64,000 nt of DNA, from positions 248,001 through 312,000 of IMG/VR virus record IMGVR_UViG_3300024252_000004; one strand, 5' to 3'. Position 1 is the stretch's first letter; every line of letters starts with the position of its first letter. Under the pieces are notes generated by a model. The model ran no database searches. It saw nothing but the letters and a program-made list of their open reading frames with translations, and had not been told where the DNA came from. This document shows positions 4,239 through 47,094 of this stretch, piece by piece. Made by a program: the position numbers and the translations under genes.

Positions 4239-4332
4239 GGAGAGTCAATCCGAAAGCTGGCGACGGAACCGGATTTGAAACCCGGCGAGACTTTATAGGT
4301 CCTTAAGAGTTCGACCCTCTTACTCTCCGCCA
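4239..4332 (+). tRNA. tRNA-Ser(UGA)
   Basis: GGAGAGT/ACTCTCC acceptor, G73-CCA, long variable arm, loop TT-TGA-AA. Confidence 0.9.
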
Positions 4333-7464: not shown

Positions 7465-7745
7465 AGAGTTTTGAATGAAGAGAAACTGGTATCACAAATG
7501 TGTGCGAAAAAAATATAAGCCGTATCCATGGATACTTTGCTCTCTGTGCCAAAAAAGAAAACTTGATGTGCTTTTAACTAAAGAAGAAGCCGACGAGCTT
7601 AACAGAAAGCTCAAACTGGAGAAGTAATGTTTTACCTTAGTAATCGAAATATGAACGTGGCCTAACGAAAGCGATTAGGTCACATACGCCTAAACTTGCA
7701 GCTACATTTTTTTTGATTAACAGTTTATACAATAAGGTAATTACA

Positions 7746-9140
7746 ATGGAACCAGTATATGACGACGGGTCCAGCATATGGTATGCTTACACCGTCGATG
7801 AACTACACGGCATTACAGAGCCACGAAAGCATGTTGTTTTTCGTGGTTGGATTAAAACAATCAGACATTCCAAGGCCGGAATGTCATTCATTCACGTAAC
7901 AGATGGGAGCGCTTTGCGCCCGTATCAGATTTTCGTTAAGGAGTCTGACGTAGAGGGTTACGATGAGATTAAGAAGCTCACTTCTGGCTGCTCAATTGAA
8001 GTCTATGGCGAAGTCGTAGAATCAAAGGGTAAGGGTCAGGACTTTGAGCTTATCGCACAGAGCCTTAAGATTCATGGTTTGGTCGAAGACCCTGCCACGT
8101 ATCCTATTCAGGCCAAAGATACTTCAATGGAGTATCTCAGGTCTGTTGCTCACCTCAGACCACGCTCGCAGGTCTTCTCTTCTATTACGAGAGTAAGGAC
8201 AGAGTTGGCTCATGCCACACAGAGCTTCTTCTACGGTAAGGGTTATCAGTGGATCCACACCCCGATCATTACAGGCAGTGATTGTGAAGGTGGTGGTGAA
8301 ATGTTTAGAGTCTCTACAGATTCTAAGGAAGAGTTCTTCGGTAAGCCTGCATTCCTCACTGTGTCTGGACAGTTGAACGTCGAACCATTTGCATGTTCAA
8401 TGGGCAAGGTTTATACCTTCGGTCCTACGTTCAGAGCAGAGAACAGCCAGACCTCCAGGCACCTGTCTGAGTTCTGGATGATTGAGCCAGAGACTGCATT
8501 TTACGATCTTGACGACAACGTCAAGCTTGCGACTGAGTTTCTACAATCAATCTTCAGAAGCTGCTTGGACTATAGATATGAGGATCTTGAGTACCTTGCT
8601 GGTCAGTTTAGAGAAGGTCAAGCTTTCCTATCTACCCTGCAAAAGGTAGTCTCCGAACCTCCGGAGAGGATGACATACACTGAGGCTATCAAGATCCTTG
8701 AAGCTACAGACCATCCTTTTGAGTTCCCTGTTTCTTGGGGAATCGATCTACAGTCGGAGCATGAGAAATTCCTTTGTGAATACGTCGGCGGTAAGATTCT
8801 TGTTGTCACAGATTATCCCAAGGATATCAAGGCTTTCTATATGAAGCTTAGTGAGGACGAGAAGACTGTCGGAGCAATGGATATTCTCCTGCCAGGAATT
8901 GGCGAGATTATCGGAGGCTCACAGCGAGAGGAAAAGTTCGATGTTCTTTTGAGAAGGATTCAGGAAATGGGTCTGGAACGAGAAGAGTACGAATGGTACC
9001 TCGACCTGAGAAAGTATGGCACCGTGCCTCACTCTGGATTCGGACTCGGCTTTGAACGAGCAGTACAGTATGTCACAGGTGTTCCCAACATTAGAGACAC
9101 AATCCCTTACCCAAGGGCTGTAGGAAAGATGGAGTACTGA
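7746..9140 (+). CDS. asnS: Asparaginyl-tRNA synthetase
   Basis: OB domain, LRSVAHLRPR, FLTVSGQLNVE, GPTFRAENSQTSRHLSEFWMIEPE, GTVPHSGFGLGFER. Confidence 0.96.
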   Translation: MEPVYDDGSSIWYAYTVDELHGITEPRKHVVFRGWIKTIRHSKAGMSFIHVTDGSALRPYQIFVKESDVEGYDEIKKLTSGCSIEVYGEVVESKGKGQDFELIAQSLKIHGLVEDPATYPIQAKDTSMEYLRSVAHLRPRSQVFSSITRVRTELAHATQSFFYGKGYQWIHTPIITGSDCEGGGEMFRVSTDSKEEFFGKPAFLTVSGQLNVEPFACSMGKVYTFGPTFRAENSQTSRHLSEFWMIEPETAFYDLDDNVKLATEFLQSIFRSCLDYRYEDLEYLAGQFREGQAFLSTLQKVVSEPPERMTYTEAIKILEATDHPFEFPVSWGIDLQSEHEKFLCEYVGGKILVVTDYPKDIKAFYMKLSEDEKTVGAMDILLPGIGEIIGGSQREEKFDVLLRRIQEMGLEREEYEWYLDLRKYGTVPHSGFGLGFERAVQYVTGVPNIRDTIPYPRAVGKMEY

Positions 9141-11019: not shown

Positions 11020-11593
11020 CCAACCCTATTACGTATTCGACAAACTAGACGGTTCAAACATCAGAGTTAGATGGACAAAGAAGAAAGGCTTTGTCATGTT
11101 CGGAACACGAACCCAACTCATGGATGAATCAGATCCAATGTTCGGCCCGGCCAAAGGTCTTTTTCTTGAGAAGTATGGCGACGACCTTGATGAGATAATG
11201 AGAAAGGCTCGCATCGAACGTGCCCAATTCTATTATGAGTATTGGAGTCCTAACTCTTTCGGTGGCTATCATGCGGACGAACCTCACGAGGTTACTCTGT
11301 TTGATGTTGATATCTACAGAAAAGGACTGCTACCTCCTAAAGAATTTTTGAAGCTCGTAGGTCATCTTGATACAGCAAAGTTGTTGTACCATGGAAATAT
11401 TACCCAGGATTTGATTGAGAGCATACGCAACGGTACTTTGGAAGGGATGACCTTCGAGGGCGTTATCTGTAAGGCTAAGAGTCAGAAGAAAACACCGATG
11501 CCAGTAATGTTCAAGATCAAAAATGTGGCTTGGTACCTCAGATTGCATGGCGTATGTCAAGGCGACGAAGGATTGTATGAGGAGTTGAAATGA
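10979..11593 (+). CDS. RNA-ligase-like nucleotidyltransferase
   Basis: Motif I FDKLDGSN, TLFDV, motif IV FEGVICK, motif V FKIK. Confidence 0.7.
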   Translation: MKQYPSIAATIRRDQPYYVFDKLDGSNIRVRWTKKKGFVMFGTRTQLMDESDPMFGPAKGLFLEKYGDDLDEIMRKARIERAQFYYEYWSPNSFGGYHADEPHEVTLFDVDIYRKGLLPPKEFLKLVGHLDTAKLLYHGNITQDLIESIRNGTLEGMTFEGVICKAKSQKKTPMPVMFKIKNVAWYLRLHGVCQGDEGLYEELK

Positions 11594-12009
11594 ATACGTC
11601 ACCAACTGAAAACTCCAATGGAACTAAGCGTTGGCATGTAAATGGTAAGCTTCATCGGCTTGGTGGACCTGCTGTTGAGCACTCCAATGGAACTAAGTAT
11701 TGGTATGTAAATGGTAAGCGCCATCGGCTTGATGGACCTGCTGTTGAGTACGCCAATGGAACTAAGCATTGGTATGTGGAAGGCAAGCGTCATTGCATTG
11801 ATGGACCTGCTGTTGAGCTTTGCGATGGAGCTAACTATTGGTTTGCTGATGGTAAGCTTCATCGGCTTGACGGACCAGCCATTGAGTACGTCAATGGAAC
11901 TAAGCATTGGTTTGTTGATGGCGTGGAATACAGCTTAGCTGATTACCTTGATTTGGTTTCCGAGGAAGTCCTTGAGGACATCGTGTTAAACCACTTACCG
12001 GGGTTCTGA
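11590..12009 (+). CDS. 22-aa HRxDGPA repeat protein, paralogue 1
   Basis: Repeats of KLHRLDGPAVEYANGTKxWYVNG plus a shared C-terminus. Confidence 0.85.
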   Translation: MNTSPTENSNGTKRWHVNGKLHRLGGPAVEHSNGTKYWYVNGKRHRLDGPAVEYANGTKHWYVEGKRHCIDGPAVELCDGANYWFADGKLHRLDGPAIEYVNGTKHWFVDGVEYSLADYLDLVSEEVLEDIVLNHLPGF

Positions 12010-12010
12010 A

Positions 12011-12508
12011 ATGACTACTGAGAAACCCACTGTTATTGAAAACTCGAATGGATATAAGTGTTGGTACACAAATGGTAAGCTTCATCGGCTTGATGGACCT
12101 GCCGTTGAGCGTTTCAATGGAACTAAGCGTTGGTATGTTGATGGTAAGCTTCATCGGCTTGATGGCCCTGCCATTGAGCTATTCAATGGAGATAAGTATT
12201 GGTATGTTGATGGTAAGCTTCATCGGCTTGACGGACCTGCCATGGAGTACGCCAATGGATCTAAGTATTGGTTTATAGATGGTAAGCGTCATCGCCTTGA
12301 CGGACCTGCCATTGAGTACGCCAATGGGTCTAAGGAGTGGTATGTAAAAGGTAAGTTTCATCGGCTTGATGGCCCTGCCGTTGAGTACGCCAATGGAGAT
12401 AAGTTTTGGTATGTTGATGGCGTGGAATACAGTTTAGCTGATTACCTTGACTTGGTTTCTGAAGAAGTCCTTGAGGATATTGTATTAAACCATTTACCGG
12501 GGTTCTGA
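12011..12508 (+). CDS. 22-aa HRxDGPA repeat protein, paralogue 2
   Basis: Same repeat and C-terminus; longest member. Confidence 0.85.
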   Translation: MTTEKPTVIENSNGYKCWYTNGKLHRLDGPAVERFNGTKRWYVDGKLHRLDGPAIELFNGDKYWYVDGKLHRLDGPAMEYANGSKYWFIDGKRHRLDGPAIEYANGSKEWYVKGKFHRLDGPAVEYANGDKFWYVDGVEYSLADYLDLVSEEVLEDIVLNHLPGF

Positions 12509-12509
12509 A

Positions 12510-12800
12510 ATGGCTACTGATAAACCAACTGTTACTGAGCATTTAAATGGAGATAAGTATTGGTATGTGCATGATAAGCTTCATCGGTTTGATGGCCCTG
12601 CCGTTGAGCGCACCAATGGAAATAAACTTTGGTATGTAAATGGTAAGTGTCATCGCCTTGACGGACCTGCTGTTGAGTTCGCTGACGGAACTAAGTATTG
12701 GTATGTTGATGGCGTTCAGTACAGTTTAGCTGATTACCTTGATTTGGTTTCCGAGGAAGTCCTTGAAGACATCGTGTTAAACCATTTACCGGGGTTTTAA
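12510..12800 (+). CDS. 22-aa HRxDGPA repeat protein, paralogue 3
   Basis: Same repeat and C-terminus; shortest member. Confidence 0.85.
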   Translation: MATDKPTVTEHLNGDKYWYVHDKLHRFDGPAVERTNGNKLWYVNGKCHRLDGPAVEFADGTKYWYVDGVQYSLADYLDLVSEEVLEDIVLNHLPGF

Positions 12801-12801
12801 A

Positions 12802-13230
12802 ATGACTACTGATGAACCCACTGTTACTGAGTACGCCAATGGATCTAAGCGTTGGCATGTAAATGGTAAGCTTCATCGGCTTGATGGACCTGCCATTGAA
12901 TACGCCAATGGAACTAAGTATTGGTATAAAAATGGTAAGCTTCATCGGCTTAATGGACCTGCCATTGAATACGCCGATGGAACTAAACATTGGCATGTAA
13001 ATGGTAAGCTTCATCGGCTTGATGGACCAGCCATTGAGTCCGCCGATGGATCTAAGTATTGGTATAAAAATGGTAAGCTTCATCGGCTTAATGGACCTGC
13101 CATTGAATACGCCAATGGAAGTAAGCATTGGTATGCAAATGGCGTTCAGTACAGCTTAGCTGATTACCTTGATCTTGTTTCCGAGGATGTCCTTGAAGAC
13201 ATTGTATTAAACCATTTGCCGGGGTTCTGA
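12802..13230 (+). CDS. 22-aa HRxDGPA repeat protein, paralogue 4
   Basis: Same repeat and C-terminus. Confidence 0.85.
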   Translation: MTTDEPTVTEYANGSKRWHVNGKLHRLDGPAIEYANGTKYWYKNGKLHRLNGPAIEYADGTKHWHVNGKLHRLDGPAIESADGSKYWYKNGKLHRLNGPAIEYANGSKHWYANGVQYSLADYLDLVSEDVLEDIVLNHLPGF

Positions 13231-15077: not shown

Positions 15078-15451
15078 TGTTACTTGATAAAACTTAGACA
15101 CAGAACACTGATAAACTGTACGTGGTGACTCGAAAGGATCTGTTCCCTGGTGCTCAGATCGCACAGGCACTACATGCCTTCAGAGAGTTCATCGAAGAAT
15201 ACCCCTCCCTTGATCAGGAATGGTATAAGACATCCAATTACATTGCAATCCTTTCCGCTCCTGATGAAGGAGAGTTGGAGCGTCTGTCTCTCAGATTGAC
15301 GAAGAAAGGTATCAAGCATTCCTTATTCAGGGAGCCTGATTTTGACAATGAGTTGACGGCTATCGCCATTGAACCCGGCAGAGACTCGAAGAGAGCTTGT
15401 AGCTCATATCCTCTCGCCCTTAAAGAGTATTCTCTTCAGGGTATGAAATGA
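15074..15451 (+). CDS. PTH2-like peptidyl-tRNA hydrolase with an in-frame TAG at codon 8 (15095-15097)
   Basis: ATG ATG TTA CTT GAT AAA ACT TAG ACA CAG AAC ACT GAT AAA CTG TAC GTG GTG ACT CGA AAG GAT; KLYVVTRKDL..GAQIAQALHA...FREPD...TAIAIEP. Confidence 0.7.
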
Positions 15452-23906: not shown

Positions 23907-24290
23907 ATGGCAGATACATTTGTCGAGTATTTGATTGAGAATTTTGCAGAAAGAGTAGGAAGAGTTAGAGGCAATTCTCTTAACGAGAAGGTGGCCTTTT
24001 TGAGAGGTAGATATCTGAAGACCGCTCTGGATGGCCGAAAGGAATCCGAAGCAGGAAATGATACCTCTATCTATCGTTCTGCTTATGCTTCTGCGCACGA
24101 AGATATAGGAAACATGCTTGTTGACTTCGATGAGTCTATCGAGTATCTTGAGACTGAGATCATCAGCTACATCGTAACGCTTATGGAAACTACCGCCGTT
24201 AATAAGACTCCATCCTCCGCAGGGTATTTGGATGCTTATGGCTATATGGTTGCCGAGCTTAGAAGGGCTGTGGAGGAATCAAATGTTTGA
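23907..24290 (+). CDS. Hypothetical protein
   Basis: ORF track. Confidence 0.55.
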   Translation: MADTFVEYLIENFAERVGRVRGNSLNEKVAFLRGRYLKTALDGRKESEAGNDTSIYRSAYASAHEDIGNMLVDFDESIEYLETEIISYIVTLMETTAVNKTPSSAGYLDAYGYMVAELRRAVEESNV

Positions 24291-25716
24291 GTTTGATAAG
24301 AGACAGCTAAAGAAGCTTTCTGAAATGAGAGCAGAAGGTGTCGATCCTTATCCCGTGGGGGAAAGCGGTGTGATGCCTCTGTCCGTAATTGATGGGCTAA
24401 GAGAGTTCTCGATGGGAGTTCTTGAGGGAACTGATCCTGTAAGAGTATTCGGAAGAGTTCGTTTTAAGAATGAAATGGGAAAGCTTGGGTTCGGAAGGAT
24501 CGAAGATGATGGCGGCCGAGTACAGATATGTGTTCGAAAGAACGAAGTATCTCCGGAAGCTTTCAAGGCTTGGAAGAGACTGGATCTGGGTGACTGGGTT
24601 TATGTCTCTGGTACATATGGTCGTACACGTTCGGGCGAGCTTACGATCTTCGTAACGGATATTAGTCTTGCATCGAAGTGTGTCTCCCCTATGCCTGATA
24701 AGCTGTCCGGCTTCACGGATGTAGAGCAGGAGTACCGTAAGAGGTATCTTCATCTTGCTGTATCGTCTGAGGCAAGGGACCTGTTTAAGCGCAGGTCCAA
24801 CACAGTCTCTCTCATGAGAAGGATGCTTGAGGGTCGAGGATTCATGGAGGTAGAGACTCCTATGCTCCACTCCATTCCTGGCGGAGCTTTGGCTAAGCCA
24901 TTCGTGACGCATCACAATGCACTTAATCAGGAAATGTTTCTTAGGATTGCTCCAGAGCTTCATCTGAAGAGACTGTTGGTTGGCGGATTCCCCAGGGTAT
25001 TCGAGATTAACAGATGCTTTAGGAATGAGGGAATTGGAACTAAGTACAATCCTGAATTTACTACGGTTGAGCTTTACCAAGCTCATGCAACATATGATGA
25101 CCTTATCGAATTGATCTCGATTATTGTTTCAGAGCTTGGACAGTTTGCTTCGTCAGACAATCCTGTGGACTTTGATAACATTACGCGAATCAGATTCGAT
25201 GATGCCATTCGGAATCTTGGGATTGAAGATCCTTGGAACGTCGATCAGCTAAGGGCATTCTGGGTTGCTAACCGTGGAGAGAGCGAAAGCTTGCCGGATA
25301 CTGTTGGTGATTGGTATGATATCATCTTCGATGCATTCATTCAGGATACGCTAATTGATCCTACCTTTATCACTAACCATCCTTCCGAGACTTCACCTCT
25401 CGCAAGAAAGACTGATGGAGACTCAAGGACTGTTGATAGGTTCGAGCTTTACATTCGAGGCATGGAAGTGTCTGATGGATGGACAGAGCTTAATGATCCT
25501 GTTGAGCAGGCTGAGAATTTCGTTCAGCAGCTTGCACGAAGAGAGGGCGGGGATGAAGAGGCTATGCTTTTTGATGAGGATTTTGTAAGAGCATTGAGTT
25601 ATGGTATGCCACCAGCAGCAGGAGTCGGACTTGGTATTGACAGGCTGATGATGGTACTTTGTAACAAGAAGAGCATTCGTGACGTAATCCTATTCCCTAC
25701 TCTACGTAGGGAATAG
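24283..25716 (+). CDS. lysS: Class II lysyl-tRNA synthetase
   Basis: OB domain, GFMEVETPML, LRIAPELHLKRLLVGG, FRNEG, GMPPAAGVGLGIDRL. Confidence 0.96.
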   Translation: MFEFDKRQLKKLSEMRAEGVDPYPVGESGVMPLSVIDGLREFSMGVLEGTDPVRVFGRVRFKNEMGKLGFGRIEDDGGRVQICVRKNEVSPEAFKAWKRLDLGDWVYVSGTYGRTRSGELTIFVTDISLASKCVSPMPDKLSGFTDVEQEYRKRYLHLAVSSEARDLFKRRSNTVSLMRRMLEGRGFMEVETPMLHSIPGGALAKPFVTHHNALNQEMFLRIAPELHLKRLLVGGFPRVFEINRCFRNEGIGTKYNPEFTTVELYQAHATYDDLIELISIIVSELGQFASSDNPVDFDNITRIRFDDAIRNLGIEDPWNVDQLRAFWVANRGESESLPDTVGDWYDIIFDAFIQDTLIDPTFITNHPSETSPLARKTDGDSRTVDRFELYIRGMEVSDGWTELNDPVEQAENFVQQLARREGGDEEAMLFDEDFVRALSYGMPPAAGVGLGIDRLMMVLCNKKSIRDVILFPTLRRE

Positions 25717-27105: not shown

Positions 27106-27587
27106 TATTTACAGATTCATACAAGTTGTCGGCACATATTGACAAGGTTCATCCTGGCACAAAGATTGTGTTGACATCTGGTGGCTTTGATCCTCTGCAC
27201 CTTGGACACCTACAGTGTATTCAGGGTGCGGCGGAGATAAAGGATGATGGCATTCTTGTTGTCGTATGCAATTCTAATGACTGGTTGGTCAGAAAGAAGG
27301 GCTACGCATTCATGCCTGAGATTGAACGACTGTCGATTGTTGATGCACTTAAGGGTGTAGACTATACTCTGGTTTGGGACGATGGAGGCCCCACTGTATG
27401 CGGAGCGATCGAAGCTATTCGGCCAGATATTTTCGCTAAGGGTGGAGATAGAGATAGCTCAAAGAATGTTCCGGAGTTTGATCTTTGCGAACAGCAGGGA
27501 TGCGAAGTTGTATTCGGAGTTGGCGGAGGAAAGATTCAGTCCAGTTCCGAACTTGTTAAGAAGTTCAATGATCGAGAGGGCACATGA
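27102..27587 (+). CDS. Cytidylyltransferase-like (RfaE/TagD family) protein
   Basis: GGFDPLHLGH, KGGDR, GGKIQSSS. Confidence 0.88.
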   Translation: MIFTDSYKLSAHIDKVHPGTKIVLTSGGFDPLHLGHLQCIQGAAEIKDDGILVVVCNSNDWLVRKKGYAFMPEIERLSIVDALKGVDYTLVWDDGGPTVCGAIEAIRPDIFAKGGDRDSSKNVPEFDLCEQQGCEVVFGVGGGKIQSSSELVKKFNDREGT

Positions 27588-28911
27588 GAGATCAACCTAT
27601 TGTAATTGAAATATATGATAAAGGATCTGGGAAGATAAAAATTCCAAAACTGGAACTTGTCGAACCTTTCGTAAAGATTATATGGTGGGAATACACCCTT
27701 TACACCACTGAGAGTCTCGCCAAGATTCGCACCATTGGCGGAGCCCCAAGGTATTACATTTTTCCAAATGAGGATGGAGGGGTTGATAGATTTACAGATC
27801 GTTCGAATCGCAGAAATCCGATGTGTGTCGGTAGTTTCTATAATCTTATGAGCAAAGAAGAGCAGTCTGAGTTCGATGAGAACATTGAAGTTCTGCTAGG
27901 GATTTTTGAAGCAAATGAGAACTGAACTACTTAAGTTTAGAGACATCGTTCACTCCAACACTATTCGGTATGCACTTCCTGGGCTTGAACTAATTGAGCC
28001 ATTCGGAGTAGCTCAATGGAACTCGACTTTAATATATTGCGCTCCTTCTCAGTTTCGTGAAAATGACAGATATCCTAATTCATATGCATATTACAATGCT
28101 GCGAACCGTCGACCATGCATAAAGAACGGGCGGGGGAATGGGTGCCTTTCGGAATTTATCAGCGAGATGACAGACGAAGAGCAGGCGCAGTTTAGAGAGA
28201 ACATTGTTGAAATCTTTGAGATTCTTGGAATAAAATGATTGGTGAATATCCGCTTGGAACATATTATAACGGAACAGGAAAGATTAAGATTCCTGGCTTG
28301 AACGGGCTTGGCCCCTTCAAAGCTGCTCTGTGGGCGAGGCACACAGTGTACTCCACAGATAGCTTGTGGGAAAGTAAATTACGCCGAGCGCCGTGGAATC
28401 CTCCATACATTTGCAAGCGTAATTATGATGATCCAGAGATAAGGATATTCGGAAGAAGGGACCTTGTTTGTTTGGGGAAATTTATCAGCTTAATGTCGGA
28501 TGATGAAAAGGCATTGGTAGAAGAGAACATTGATGAGATTATGAATGTATTGGGGATTTTATGAGGGCAGAAAGATTAATTTTACCGGAAGCTATCAGTA
28601 TATATCACCACCCTTTAAATCAGATGTATGTTATTGATGGCCTTGATCGGCTTGGTCCCCTTGGTTCCATTAGACTTAACTCTAGGTATCTTTACAGTAC
28701 GCCGGGGTTTGATCGGAAGCAGGGTCGCACAGCAGGGATGCTTCCGAGAACTTATTTTTGGGGATATAATGGTAGGCTGAGAATTCAGATTAATAACAAA
28801 TACATATCGAGTGCTTGTTTGTCTCGCTTTATGAAGGTGCTTGATGCACAAGAGCGATTTGAAATGGAGGAGGCGCTTCCAGAAATATTGGATCTACTAA
28901 ACTACAGATAA
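27584..28911 (+). CDS. Four tandem ~110-aa paralogues of unknown function
   Basis: Shared (K/Y)xIPGLxxxxPF/G near the N-terminus and a C-terminal F..xM..EE...ENIxEhh motif. Confidence 0.7.
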
Positions 28912-40227: not shown

Positions 40228-40915
40228 ATGAATTCGATCATATTGGAAATTAAAGCTGCCGAAGGCGGCACAGATGCAAAGCTCCTTGTTGATGAACAGT
40301 TGGCCATTTATAGGAGATACTGTTCTCGGAGGTCTCTTTGAGTTAGCTCTCTTAGATTCCAGAAGCGGTTTTATCAGATGCAGAGTCAGCGGCAAAAACG
40401 TCAAAAAACATTTTAGGCATGAGCCTGGAGGCCACAGATGGCAAAGGGTTCCTCCGACAGAGAGACGAGGAAGGGTTCATACTTCTACGATCACTGTCGC
40501 TGTCCTACCGGAAGTAACTGAATCTGAAGTTAAGATTAGCGAAAAAGATTTAGAATGGAAAGCCTTTAGGGGTTCTGGTCCCGGCGGTCAGCATAGAAAC
40601 AAAACTGATTCTGCTGTGTCGCTTCACCATAAGCCTACTGGAATCAAGATCCGTTCTGAATCTCAAAAGAGTCAGAAGCAGAATAAGGACACCGCTCTTG
40701 CAATATTGAGAGCGAGGTTGCATTCTGAGCAGAGAGAGTCTCAGTCTTTGCGACGCAGTAATATGAGGAAGAGCCAAGTGGGCTCAGGTATGCGCGCCGA
40801 CAAAATCAGGACGATCAGGTTGCAGGACGGACAAGTTACGGATCACAACACTGGAAAAAGAATCTCTGCGAAAAAATATTTGCGCGGAGACTTGGAAGGT
40901 CTATTTGAAAAGTAA
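40228..40915 (+). CDS. Class-1 peptide chain release factor (RF1-type PxT), programmed +1 frameshift at 40336-40341
   Basis: MNSIILEIKAAEGGTDA; GGAGG-TCT-CTT-TGA; +1 frame GGHRWQRVPPTE.RGRVHTS, GSGPGGQHRNKTDSAV, KIRT. Confidence 0.88.
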
Positions 40916-45671: not shown

Positions 45672-45759
45672 GGGTCGTTATCCCGTAGGGGCAGCGGTGG
45701 AGACTGTAAATCTCCTGTCATTATTGACTCGGTTGGTTCGACTCCAGCACGGCCCACCA
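45672..45759 (+). tRNA. tRNA-Tyr(GUA)
   Basis: Loop CT-GTA-AA, long variable arm, ACCA end. Confidence 0.9.
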
Positions 45760-45850
45760 TATTTGTGAAGCGATACATCGATAAACACTGACCACGGCTA
45801 CGGGCGGGATGATGAAGGGGCAGTAGCCTGTCCCAAATCGCTCACAAATA
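45760..45850 (+). ncRNA. Candidate structured RNA with an H-type pseudoknot
   Basis: Closing stem TATTTGTGA.GCGAT/ATCGCTCACAAATA; GGCTAC/GTAGCC; GGGATG/TGTCCC. Confidence 0.6.
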
Positions 45851-45857
45851 TACTTTC

Positions 45858-45921
45858 GGGACAGTCTCTTGTAGGAAAGATTACGCGCGTGACATCGGTT
45901 CAATTCCGATCTGTTCCACCA
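45858..45921 (+). ncRNA. 64-nt anticodon-less tRNA-like RNA with alanine identity
   Basis: GGGACAG/CTGTTCC (G3-U70), A73-CCA, T-arm ATCGG-TTCAATT-CCGAT; only 29 nt between acceptor and T-arm. Confidence 0.75.
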
Positions 45922-46433
45922 CTGAATCGTCCATCACCTGATAGGAAGTGATCAACTTCGTGACAGGTCGGACAAACAATCTCTAAGTTCTCAATCGAGT
46001 TATTCTCTCTATTGCGATCTTTATGATGAACTTGTAGAACTTCAGGATGCTTATCGTATCCGCAATGAGAGCATATCTGTTCAAGATGCTCTTTTGCAGT
46101 TTTGCGATAATCCTTTCGGTTATCAGTATAGTGCGGCGGATGAATTTCTTTTATCCCTCCTATCCTTTGTGCAATATCTTTGCAATTTCTTGAGCAAAAA
46201 ACAAATCCGCTTTTAGATGCAGCAATCTTAGAGGCAGACCTGTAAAAGTCTTTATCACAAATAGCACAAACACAATTTGGCTTTTGTATCTTCGGATTTT
46301 TCTTTCTCCATTCAAAAGAGCATTTGCGATTGCAAAATTTTGCGTTTCCTCTGTTTAATTCTTTAATTTCTGCATCAAATTGCGTATAACAATTTAAGCA
46401 ACTTTTCTTAATGGTTCTACCTTTGTAAGACAT
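45900..46433 (-). mobile_element. HNH homing endonuclease with N-terminal Zn-finger repeats
   Basis: FCNRKC, FCSRNC, CSHCG...LQVHHKDRNRENNSIENLEIVCPTCH. Confidence 0.88.
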
Positions 46434-46454: not shown

Positions 46455-46530
46455 GGGGCCTTAGCTCAATTGGGAGAGCGCGACATTTGCAATGTCGAGG
46501 TCGCGAGTTCGATCCTCGCAGGCTCCACCA
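46455..46530 (+). tRNA. tRNA-Ala(UGC)
   Basis: GGGGCCT/AGGCTCC acceptor, loop TT-TGC-AA. Confidence 0.93.
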
Positions 46531-46589: not shown

Positions 46590-46609
46590 TCTCCCTTAGC
46601 TCAGTTGGT
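46590..46609 (+). pseudogene. 5' fragment of a disrupted tRNA gene
   Basis: TCTCCCT-TAGCTCAGTTGGT ends at the HNH stop codon. Confidence 0.6.
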
Positions 46610-47094
46610 TAATTCCATTTTGGTTTTAACTTATAGTGTTCTTCTCTGTGGCAGTTTGCACACAGCATGACGCATTTGTCAAGTTCAGCTTTAATGGTAT
46701 CCCAGGCATAAGTATTCCCAGAGCCAATGCCGAAATCTTTCTCGTTTGGTTCTAAATGGTGAAAATCAAATGCATCAATACATTTGTCATATCCACAATA
46801 CTCGCACTTTTCTCCTTTATATTCTACGGCTTTAATCTTACACTGCCATCTTCTTTTTTGCACATAGTACTTGTTCTTACACTTTTTTGAGCAAAATTTT
46901 CCTGAAGATGGCAAGTCACACAAATGCCATGTGCATTCCAAAGCTTTTGACTTTTCTTTATTTTTTGGAGAAGTTGATAGTCCAAATTTCTTAAGCCAAT
47001 GACGAACATTTGTTTGCGAGCAAGATAGCTCTTTTGCGATTTCTCTGGTAGAATAATTATTATCAACTAATAACTTTAAAGTTTCTAATTCCAT
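46609..47094 (-). mobile_element. HNH homing endonuclease with N-terminal HTH
   Basis: STREIAKELSCSQTNVRHWL; CEYCGY...FDFHH...KCVMLCANCHREEH. Confidence 0.88.

What the first reader, a model, noticed from the sequence alone, without database searches (positions are those of the whole stretch)
45858..45921. Minimal anticodon-less alanine-acceptor RNA resembling a tmRNA tRNA-like domain without the mRNA part
Seen: 64 nt with G1-C72, G2-C71, G3-U70, A73 and CCA, a canonical T-arm, a stemless GG-containing D-like loop, and a 4-bp C(GCGC)G hairpin replacing the anticodon arm. Established: G3-U70 plus A73 suffices for AlaRS charging, and the tmRNA TLD has this layout. Inference: an SmpB/EF-Tu decoy, a template-free Ala donor for stalled ribosomes (then cleared by PTH2), or a non-ribosomal Ala donor.
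Basis: partly seen in the sequence, partly recalled or inferred. Interest (0 to 1): 0.82.

Follow-up and report, generated by a model that had tools for sequence, protein, structure and literature searches.

The report
Phage alanine-type tRNA lacking an anticodon arm
A huge phage carries, among its many tRNA genes, a conserved 64-base tRNA-like gene that keeps the marks for charging with alanine but has no anticodon arm, so it probably acts on stalled-ribosome rescue or another alanine-RNA pathway rather than in decoding.

Summary
Window 45858-45921 (+) has a 7-bp acceptor stem with G3·U70, A73, an encoded CCA, a canonical T arm and a 12-nt hairpin (UUAC-GCGC-GUGA) where the 17-nt anticodon arm should be. 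Shuffled windows give about 0.005 such tRNA-like hits.

It is not a fresh deletion remnant. The same window holds a 106-nt paralogue (61889-61994) with the same G3·U70/A73/CCA and the same CGCGCG hairpin. Related 58-116-nt elements lie in tRNA arrays of unrelated phage contigs. Their stems carry compensatory changes while G1-C72, G2-C71 and G3·U70 stay fixed. Each array checked also has a normal tRNA-Ala.

A scan that did not require CGCGCG found a wider class of 48-71-nt alanine-type, anticodon-arm-less elements.

The closest known thing is the tRNA-like-domain-only tmRNA of mycobacteriophage DS6A, which inhibits tmRNA in E. coli, and the tag-less organelle tmRNAs. This element lacks the tmRNA D-loop and P2a signature and probably has a D stem, so it is an analogue, not a shown member.

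A role in ribosome rescue is inferred, not shown. No expression data could be obtained.

Verdict: real gene, new variant of a known kind, moderately high interest.

The parts
45858..45921 (+). E1, the core 64-nt alanine-type tRNA-like gene. Acceptor 5' strand 45858-45864. D-like hairpin 45867-45880 (UCUU, GUAGGA, AAGA). Mini hairpin 45881-45892 (UUAC-GCGC-GUGA, containing CGCGCG). Single C at 45893. T arm 45894-45910. Acceptor 3' strand 45911-45917. A73 at 45918. CCA at 45919-45921.
   Evidence: Sequence; fold; shuffle control; family table; RNAalifold covariation.
45817..45857 (+). Possible 5' extension. GGGGCAG (45817-45823) can replace GGGACAG as the acceptor 5' strand, again with G3.U70. 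CUGUCCC (45828-45834) pairs with either 7-mer. This gives a 105-nt alternative, close in length to the long forms E2 (106 nt) and L114 (103 nt).
   Evidence: Scan; constrained folds of -28.1 versus -27.3 kcal/mol.
45760..45857 (+). Structured 98-nt spacer between tRNA-Tyr and E1. A 14-bp closing helix (UAUUUGUGAAGCGAU / AUCGCUCACAAAUA) encloses smaller hairpins. It has no homologue in any fetched locus.
   Evidence: Fold with z = -2.17; blastn found only itself.
61889..61994 (+). E2, a 106-nt paralogue. Acceptor GGGGAGU/ACUCUCC (G3.U70), A73, CCA, T arm UUAGG-UUCGAAU-CCUAA, and hairpin GGAU-CGCGC-GUCC just 5' of the T arm. A ~45-nt insertion follows the acceptor 5' strand: helix GGGUGG/CUACCC enclosing a T-arm-like hairpin CUGG-UUCGAGU-CCAG.
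   Evidence: Scan that did not use CGCGCG or alanine identity; Rfam tRNA 20.0 bits, below the gathering score of 29; constrained fold -30.3 versus MFE -30.9 kcal/mol.
45672..45759 (+). tRNA-Tyr(GUA) immediately upstream on the same strand; the likely co-transcript partner.
   Evidence: ARAGORN.
46455..46530 (+). Canonical tRNA-Ala(UGC) downstream. It is not a close paralogue of E1. In the relative L216 the mini element lies 5 nt upstream of tRNA-Ala(UGC).
45900..46433 (-). HNH endonuclease ORF (177 aa) on the opposite strand, lying between E1 and tRNA-Ala. Its last 22 nt overlap the 3' end of E1.
   Evidence: ORF list; Pfam HNH_3 at 1.4e-06.

Best explanation
E1 is a functional small RNA gene in the phage's tRNA region.

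Shown:
- It folds as the top half of a tRNA: acceptor stem, T arm and a GG-bearing D region.
- It has only a 12-nt hairpin where the anticodon arm should be.
- It keeps the full alanine identity set (G3.U70, A73, CCA).
- It belongs to a family kept in many phage tRNA arrays alongside a normal tRNA-Ala.

Inferred:
- It is transcribed with its tRNA neighbours and cut out by RNase P and the 3' processing enzymes.
- Host AlaRS charges it with alanine, since AlaRS does not need an anticodon.
- Because it cannot decode, it then acts as an analogue of the tRNA-like domain of tmRNA, engaging SmpB, EF-Tu and ribosomes with an empty A site.
- The outcome is one of two things. It may compete with host tmRNA, so that products on phage-infected ribosomes are not tagged for proteolysis; this is the behaviour reported for the DS6A domain-only tmRNA. 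Or it may donate alanine without supplying a tag template, leaving the peptidyl-RNA to be released by hydrolases such as the phage's own PTH2 or RF-like proteins.
For: - Real structure.
- Paralogue E2 shares G3.U70, A73, CCA and CGCGCG, and was found by a scan that used none of these.
- Relatives sit in the tRNA arrays of unrelated contigs of 35-455 kb.
- In the short forms 6 of 12 stem pairs show compensatory changes, while G1-C72, G2-C71 and G3.U70 never vary.
- The six family members recovered by the scan that did not constrain the acceptor (E1, E2, L093, L114, L150, L168) all have the alanine set.
- In L093, L168 and L170 the element is spaced 5 nt from the flanking tRNA, as tRNAs are.
- Co-resident tRNA-Ala genes are not close paralogues.
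- There is a wider class of 48-71-nt alanine-type forms without an anticodon arm.
- Short forms number 13-14 with G3.U70 against 2-4 with G3:C70 in matched scans: with Fisher p of 0.03-0.08.
- Precedent: the DS6A domain-only tmRNA inhibits tmRNA (PMC4131195, PMC11915505). I located it at JN698994 28478-28557.
- The window encodes two PTH2 domains, an RF1-like fragment, IF3, L7/L12 and peptide deformylase.
- Huge phages are known to carry tmRNA, SmpB and release factors: PMC7162821.
Against: - E1 has no tmRNA-type D-loop (GGnUUCGAC) and no G.A-flanked P2a helix. The Rfam tmRNA match covers only the acceptor and T arm, at 20.8 bits against a gathering score of 47. DS6A matches those parts too, at 34.7 bits.
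- E1 and L216 probably have a D stem, which tmRNA tRNA-like domains lack. Several members of the wider class have a normal D arm. This suggests descent from tRNA-Ala and leaves SmpB binding uncertain.
- No SmpB (tblastn with E. coli SmpB) and no tmRNA was found in the window or in the loci that carry these elements.
- There is no evidence for expression, charging or binding.
- The conserved CGCGCG hairpin is not explained by this model.
Confidence: 0.4

Rival explanations
1. The alanine-charged or AlaRS-binding mini-tRNA is used off the ribosome. It could donate alanine to an aminoacyl-tRNA-dependent transferase, as Fem/MurM-type or Ala-phosphatidylglycerol synthase enzymes read mainly the acceptor arm. 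Or it could titrate AlaRS or EF-Tu.
For: The alanine identity set is conserved while the anticodon arm is dispensable. Many members of the wider class keep a normal D arm, so they look like tRNA-Ala without the decoding part. It is established knowledge that AlaRS and such transferases accept acceptor-arm minimal substrates.
Against: No transferase of this kind was seen among the 105 ORFs of the window (one search lists the top 25 of 38 Pfam families). No conserved protein neighbour accompanies the elements, which sit inside tRNA arrays. There is no precedent in phages.
Confidence: 0.15
2. It is a decoy for host anti-phage enzymes that recognise the upper half of tRNAs (acceptor end, T arm, elbow), such as toxins that modify or cleave the CCA end or acceptor stem. 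It would soak them up without taking part in translation.
For: The position in phage tRNA arrays, which are increasingly linked to counter-defence, and the intact acceptor, T arm and CCA end. The link to counter-defence is my own knowledge, not tested here.
Against: A general decoy would not need G3.U70 and A73, yet these are fixed while the rest of the stem varies. No associated defence or anti-defence gene was identified.
Confidence: 0.12
3. It is a processing signal or structural punctuation mark. A tRNA-shaped element would be kept only so that RNase P and 3' processing enzymes cut the long transcript there, and the RNA itself would have no further role.
For: It lies in a long same-strand run of tRNAs and small ORFs with no nearby promoter or terminator match. 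T4 has stable tRNA-cluster RNAs, rnaC and rnaD, of unknown role.
Against: Processing needs neither the alanine identity pair nor an encoded CCA. In L093, L168 and L170 the element sits 5 nt from flanking tRNAs that already supply processing sites.
Confidence: 0.1
4. It is a decaying tRNA-Ala pseudogene that lost its anticodon arm by deletion and has no function.
For: ARAGORN and Rfam do not call it. An HNH homing-endonuclease gene abuts it. Its fold energy is not better than that of shuffles.
Against: Both stems are perfect and CCA is intact. A diverged paralogue in the same genome and relatives in unrelated phages keep the same reduced layout, with compensatory changes. It is not similar to the resident tRNA-Ala beyond generic tRNA positions.
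Confidence: 0.05

Closest known systems
tRNA-like-domain-only tmRNA of mycobacteriophage DS6A (tmRNA Website Phage__Mycobacterium.9; Mao et al. 2009, as cited in PMC4131195 and PMC11915505)
   Same: It is phage-encoded and about 80 nt long. It has a G3.U70 acceptor stem and a canonical T arm, with no mRNA-like part and no anticodon. It is reported to inhibit host tmRNA, perhaps by titrating SmpB.
   Different: DS6A keeps the tmRNA D-loop (UGGUGGUCGAC) and a P2a helix, and scores 34.7 bits on the Rfam tmRNA model. E1 lacks both and scores 20.8 bits. DS6A has no encoded CCA and stands alone between protein genes. E1 has an encoded CCA, a probable D stem and a CGCGCG hairpin, and sits in a tRNA array.
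Tag-less (CDS-less) organelle tmRNAs: jakobid mitochondria (Jacob et al. 2004) and ~65-bp Mallomonadaceae plastid genes (PMC11915505)
   Same: They are alanine-type tRNA-like RNAs of about 65-70 nt with no tag reading frame. They are thought to help with incomplete mRNAs together with SmpB.
   Different: They are organellar and show sequence descent from tmRNA. They co-occur with a dedicated SmpB. For E1, neither descent from tmRNA nor an SmpB partner is shown.
Standard bacterial tmRNA (Rfam RF00023)
   Same: The acceptor stem with G3.U70, A73 and CCA, and the T arm.
   Different: tmRNA is about 360 nt, with pseudoknots and a tag ORF. E1 is 64 nt with neither. ARAGORN finds no tmRNA in the window.
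tRNA-Ala and synthetic alanine minihelices or microhelices (established AlaRS biochemistry)
   Same: G3.U70 with A73 in a 7-bp acceptor stem stacked on a T arm. No anticodon is needed for charging.
   Different: Minihelices are laboratory constructs. E1 is a natural gene that also keeps a D region and an extra hairpin. Canonical tRNA-Ala has a 17-nt anticodon arm and a 5-nt variable loop.
Phage T4 stable RNAs rnaC and rnaD (species 1 and 2) in the tRNA cluster
   Same: They are non-tRNA stable RNAs encoded inside a phage tRNA cluster next to a homing-endonuclease gene. rnaC carries a T-arm (CCGGG-UUCGAAU-CCCGG) and rnaD ends in CCA. Their function is unknown.
   Different: They are 119-139 nt, have no G3.U70 alanine set, and show no sequence similarity to E1 or E2.

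Membership tests
Canonical tRNA (Rfam RF00005 / ARAGORN cloverleaf) | Four-arm cloverleaf with a 5-bp anticodon stem and a 7-nt anticodon loop | tested here: not met
   Only 13 nt lie between the D region and the T arm, forming a 4-bp stem with a 4-nt loop. ARAGORN makes no call and Rfam finds no hit at gathering score.
Canonical tRNA (Rfam RF00005 / ARAGORN cloverleaf) | 7-bp acceptor stem, 5-bp T stem with a UUCRANY loop, and GG in the D loop | tested here: met
Standard tmRNA (RF00023) | mRNA-like domain with resume codon, tag ORF and pseudoknots | tested here: not met
   The whole element is 64 nt. ARAGORN finds no tmRNA. The Rfam score is 20.8 bits against a gathering score of 47.
Domain-only / tag-less tmRNA (DS6A type, mitochondrial tmRNA) | Alanine acceptor (G3.U70, A73) plus T arm, with no tag template | tested here: met
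Domain-only / tag-less tmRNA (DS6A type, mitochondrial tmRNA) | tmRNA-type stemless D-loop (GGnUUCGAC) and a P2a helix flanked by G.A pairs | tested here: not met
   The cmscan alignment of E1 matches only the acceptor and T arm. DS6A matches the D-loop and P2a as well. E1 can form a D stem that is compensated in L216.
Domain-only / tag-less tmRNA (DS6A type, mitochondrial tmRNA) | Sequence descent from tmRNA rather than from tRNA | tested here: inconclusive
   tmRNA is the best-scoring family of the tRNA clan for E1 (20.8 bits), L168 (15.1 bits) and L524 (14.8 bits). This only reflects the model's tolerance of a large internal deletion. For E2 the best family is tRNA.
Domain-only / tag-less tmRNA (DS6A type, mitochondrial tmRNA) | Binds SmpB and affects trans-translation | not testable with these tools
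   This needs biochemistry. No SmpB gene was found in the window or in the loci that carry these elements.
tRNA-Ala pseudogene (recent deletion remnant) | Close similarity to a resident tRNA-Ala apart from the deletion, and no conservation of the reduced form elsewhere | tested here: not met
   Alignment to the resident tRNA-Ala shows only generic tRNA positions shared. The reduced form recurs with compensatory changes in unrelated contigs.
AlaRS substrate (alanine identity) | G3.U70 wobble pair and A73, with a free CCA end | tested here: met
   The sequence features are present and invariant across the family. Actual charging was not tested.

The most novel reading that the evidence does not exclude
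Phage tRNA arrays widely encode an unannotated class of alanine-accepting tRNA-like RNAs with no anticodon arm. There are short forms of 48-71 nt and long forms of 90-120 nt that carry extra T-loop hairpins. They would have arisen from tRNA-Ala independently of tmRNA and would form a viral system for controlling ribosome rescue, either by tag-free rescue or by blocking host tmRNA-SmpB. The palindromic CGCGCG loop of the E1/E2 subfamily would be a further specific contact, either a protein site or a loop-loop dimer.
Probability: 0.25. Interest if true: 0.8.

Novelty: new variant of a known kind. Interest (0 to 1): 0.6.

Why it matters
Phage tRNA genes are usually read as codon-usage helpers or as replacements for tRNAs cut by host defences. 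A conserved tRNA-like gene that can be charged with alanine but cannot decode points to a different use of the tRNA fold by viruses.

The only described phage case is a single mycobacteriophage gene, in DS6A. Here the same idea appears in another architecture, in huge and ordinary phages alike, and standard tRNA and tmRNA finders miss it.

If these RNAs block or replace tmRNA, they would be a simple and widespread viral handle on bacterial ribosome rescue. They would also be a ready-made minimal substrate for studying AlaRS, EF-Tu and SmpB. If they do something else, that function is new.

Tried and rejected
- BLAST of the region and of a neighbouring protein against GenBank phages found nothing. 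The phage is known only from two IMG/VR contigs, which are identical at the element.
- The first relaxed DNA pattern had one N too many and returned chance hits only. It was discarded and repeated correctly.
It yielded only L216, L228 and L276.
- The genome scan was filled by gammaproteobacterial tRNA-Tyr-like genes and gave no host information.
- Bystander analysis of 4.45 Mb of fetched loci gave too few truly anticodon-less elements to test alanine specificity.
- The G3:C70 control supports enrichment for alanine identity only weakly.
- Rfam scores cannot separate a tmRNA origin from a tRNA origin for such short RNAs.
- The spacer at 45760-45857 has no homologue.
- The promoter and terminator scan was uninformative.
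- No SmpB was found by tblastn.
- L171, a 45-nt match inside an ORF, was rejected as a probable chance match or attP-like tRNA/tmRNA 3' fragment.
- The L069 group (58 nt, G73, embedded in an 11-bp outer helix) and L059 (non-alanine acceptor) were set aside as different kinds.
- The idea that CGCGCG is a relic of a tRNA-Ala(CGC) anticodon loop was considered but could not be tested.

Full report
**What is there**

Window 45858-45921 (+) reads GGGACAG UC UCUU GUAGGA AAGA UUAC GCGC GUGA C AUCGG UUCAAUU CCGAU CUGUUCC A CCA. This gives:
- a 7-bp acceptor stem with G1-C72, G2-C71 and G3.U70
- discriminator A73 and an encoded CCA
- a canonical 5-bp T stem with a UUCAAUU loop.

Between the acceptor and the T arm lie only 29 nt, where a tRNA has about 41. 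RNAfold places a 4-bp D stem (UCUU/AAGA, loop GUAGGA) and a 4-bp hairpin with a GCGC loop in that stretch.

ARAGORN finds 36 tRNAs in the window, all on the + strand. It finds neither this element nor any tmRNA. Rfam at gathering score likewise misses the element.

A scan for T arm, perfect acceptor pairing and CCA gives 36 hits in the real window. The mean over 200 dinucleotide-preserving shuffles is 0.005. The element is not a chance match, although its folding energy alone is unremarkable (z = -0.81).

**Genome context**

The window belongs to a huge phage, IMG/VR contig 3300024252_000004 of 395 kb. A second sample holds the identical sequence. Nothing similar exists among GenBank phages.

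Genes run on the + strand. The exceptions are two HNH endonuclease ORFs that flank tRNA-Ala(UGC); the first overlaps the last 22 nt of the element.

Pfam scans of 105 ORFs show a dense translation toolkit:
- three class II aaRS and a HisRS-like domain
- two PTH2 domains, one of them at 15122-15448
- peptide deformylase, IF3, L7/L12 and YqeY
- an RF1-like ORF at 40274-40912 that aligns only to residues 157-335 of RF1.

No SmpB was found.

**A second copy and a family**

The same scan, which used neither alanine identity nor any hairpin motif, found a 106-nt element at 61889-61994. It has:
- acceptor GGGGAGU/ACUCUCC, again with G3.U70
- A73 and CCA
- a T arm with a different, compensated stem
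- the same CGCGCG motif in a hairpin just 5' of the T arm
- a ~45-nt insertion that itself contains a T-arm-like hairpin.

Pattern scans of IMG/VR and of metagenomes then recovered relatives:
- Short forms: L093 (58 nt), L168 and L170 (61 nt), L216 (62 nt).
- Long forms: L114, identical to L276 (103 nt), L150 (93 nt) and L228 (116 nt).

All lie inside phage tRNA arrays of 7-20 tRNAs. Every array but L228's also holds an ARAGORN-called tRNA-Ala(UGC). These tRNA-Ala genes are not close paralogues of the elements.

In L093, L168 and L170 the element sits 5 nt after the CCA of the preceding tRNA and a few nt before the next one. In L216 it is 5 nt upstream of tRNA-Ala(UGC). In the window the same pairing appears to have been split by the HNH gene.

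Across the family, acceptor positions 4-7 and the T stem differ with compensatory changes, while G1-C72, G2-C71, G3.U70, A73 and CCA stay fixed. RNAalifold on five short forms finds 6 of 12 pairs with double changes.

There is an ascertainment caveat. Most later patterns contained CGCGCG and/or UCCACCA. However, E1 and E2 were found without either. E1, E2, L093, L114, L150 and L168 came from a scan that left the acceptor free.

**A wider class**

A scan without CGCGCG (GGGC...GUCCACCA with a short spacing) returned at least 13-14 unique alanine-type elements of 48-71 nt that ARAGORN does not call. Examples are L295, L308, L328, L331, L338, L345, L381, L384, L390 and L393. Several have a normal D arm and simply lack an anticodon arm.

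The same scan returned more long forms with extra T-loop hairpins: L318, L334, L377, L392 and L403.

The matched control with G3:C70 gave 2-4 short forms.

CGCGCG therefore marks a subfamily, not the whole class.

**Comparison with what is known**

The literature describes tag-less tmRNAs in three settings:
- jakobid mitochondria
- ~65-bp genes in Mallomonadaceae plastids

I located the DS6A element at JN698994 28478-28557. Rfam's tmRNA model gives it 34.7 bits and matches its D-loop (UGGUGGUCGAC) and P2a helix.

E1 scores 20.8 bits and matches only in the acceptor and T arm. It lacks those tmRNA signatures and probably has a D stem, compensated in L216.

A bystander 68-nt element in L524 does carry GGUUUCGAC. 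True domain-only tmRNA-like genes therefore also occur in viral contigs.

Rfam scores do not discriminate origin for such short RNAs.

T4's rnaC and rnaD are a looser parallel: stable non-tRNA RNAs in a tRNA cluster, with unknown function.

**Interpretation**

The shown facts are the structure, the conservation, the alanine identity set, the tRNA-like genomic spacing and the translation-rich context.

Expression, processing, charging by AlaRS, and any contact with SmpB, EF-Tu or the ribosome are inferred.

tmRNA is the one natural bacterial system that uses an alanine-charged tRNA-like domain without an anticodon, and a phage domain-only version is known to interfere with it. The best-supported mechanism is therefore a tmRNA-domain analogue acting on ribosome rescue, either as a competitor or as a tag-free alanine donor.

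I put this at about 0.4. The lower-ranked alternatives are:
- use of the alanyl-RNA off the ribosome
- a decoy for acceptor-end-targeting defence enzymes
- a mere processing signal
- a dead pseudogene, which conservation largely excludes.

The CGCGCG hairpin and the extra T-loops of the long forms remain unexplained.

The 5' boundary is open. A 105-nt form starting at 45817 is nearly isoenergetic with the 64-nt form.

**Limits**

- The metagenome and genome scans were saturated by ordinary tRNAs.
- The host is unknown.

**Verdict**

This is a real, conserved gene and a new variant of a known kind. The interest is moderately high because the class appears widespread, is unannotated, and can be tested directly.

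Noticed in passing
window 4239-4332 (+): A 94-nt tRNA-like gene that ARAGORN misses. It has acceptor GGAGAGU/ACUCUCC, G73, CCA, a T arm and a long extra arm. The Rfam tRNA-Sec model gives 28.2 bits, below its gathering score. It looks like a class II (Ser/Sec-like) tRNA.
   Followed up: partly
window 40274-40912 (+): A 213-aa ORF with a GGQ motif aligns only to residues ~157-335 of release factor 1, at 210 bits against a cutoff of 400. The N-terminal part is missing from this ORF, so the gene may be split or truncated.
   Followed up: partly
window, whole; PTH2 at 15122-15448: There is a dense translation toolkit: three class II aaRS (two at 7713-9140 and 24232-25716), a HisRS-like domain, two PTH2 domains, peptide deformylase, IF3, L7/L12 and YqeY. 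NAMPT, NUDIX, NADAR, NAD kinase and NifU are also present.
   Followed up: partly
window 54460-54537 (+): A tRNA with anticodon CUA, labelled tRNA-Pyl by ARAGORN, is an amber-suppressor type. TAG still ends 15 of the 105 ORFs chosen.
   Followed up: no
window 45900-46433 (-) and 46609-47094 (-): Two HNH endonuclease ORFs are the only clear minus-strand genes. They bracket tRNA-Ala(UGC). The second also has an N-terminal helix-turn-helix domain.
   Followed up: partly
window 11590-13227 and 27584-28908 (+): Two tandem arrays of four paralogous small ORFs each. The first array shows 69-75% identity and the second 27-36%. The second array has no Pfam hit.
   Followed up: no
L168 3011-3102, L093 1302-1395 (-), L243, L067, L082, L100: Another recurrent tRNA-like family that ARAGORN misses, 79-94 nt long. 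It has a CUACGAA-type loop, a conserved GAAAGGUAACUGGA stretch, the T arm CAGG-UUCGAAU-CCUG and mostly a U73 discriminator.
   Followed up: no
L524 6849-6916 (+): A 68-nt alanine-type element with the tmRNA D-loop motif UUGGUUUCGAC and a short hairpin, lying directly upstream of a tRNA. It looks like a true tRNA-like-domain-only tmRNA in a viral contig.
   Followed up: partly
L094 5864-5985 (-), L377, L392, L334, L228, L150: Long alanine-type forms carry an internal T-arm hairpin soon after the 5' acceptor strand. In some, a second acceptor-like 3' strand follows. In L094 the first 41 nt end in CGGGUCCACCA and could be a minihelix of their own. Whether the architecture is nested or tandem is unresolved.
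   Followed up: partly
L411 280-428 (Acinetobacter phage vB_AbaM_P1, OL960030.2 ~12275-12423): A ~149-nt tRNA-like RNA (acceptor GGUUCAC/GUGAACU, T arm UUGGG-UUCGAUU-CCCAA, CCA) lies between tRNA-His and tRNA-Glu. It sits under a minus-strand 'hypothetical protein' annotation.
   Followed up: no
L069, L087, L110, L112, L136: A 58-nt element with CGCGCG, a T arm, G73 and a wobble-rich acceptor stem. It is embedded in an 11-bp outer helix (ACACAACAUGG / CCAUGUUGUGU) and is conserved in five contigs.
   Followed up: no
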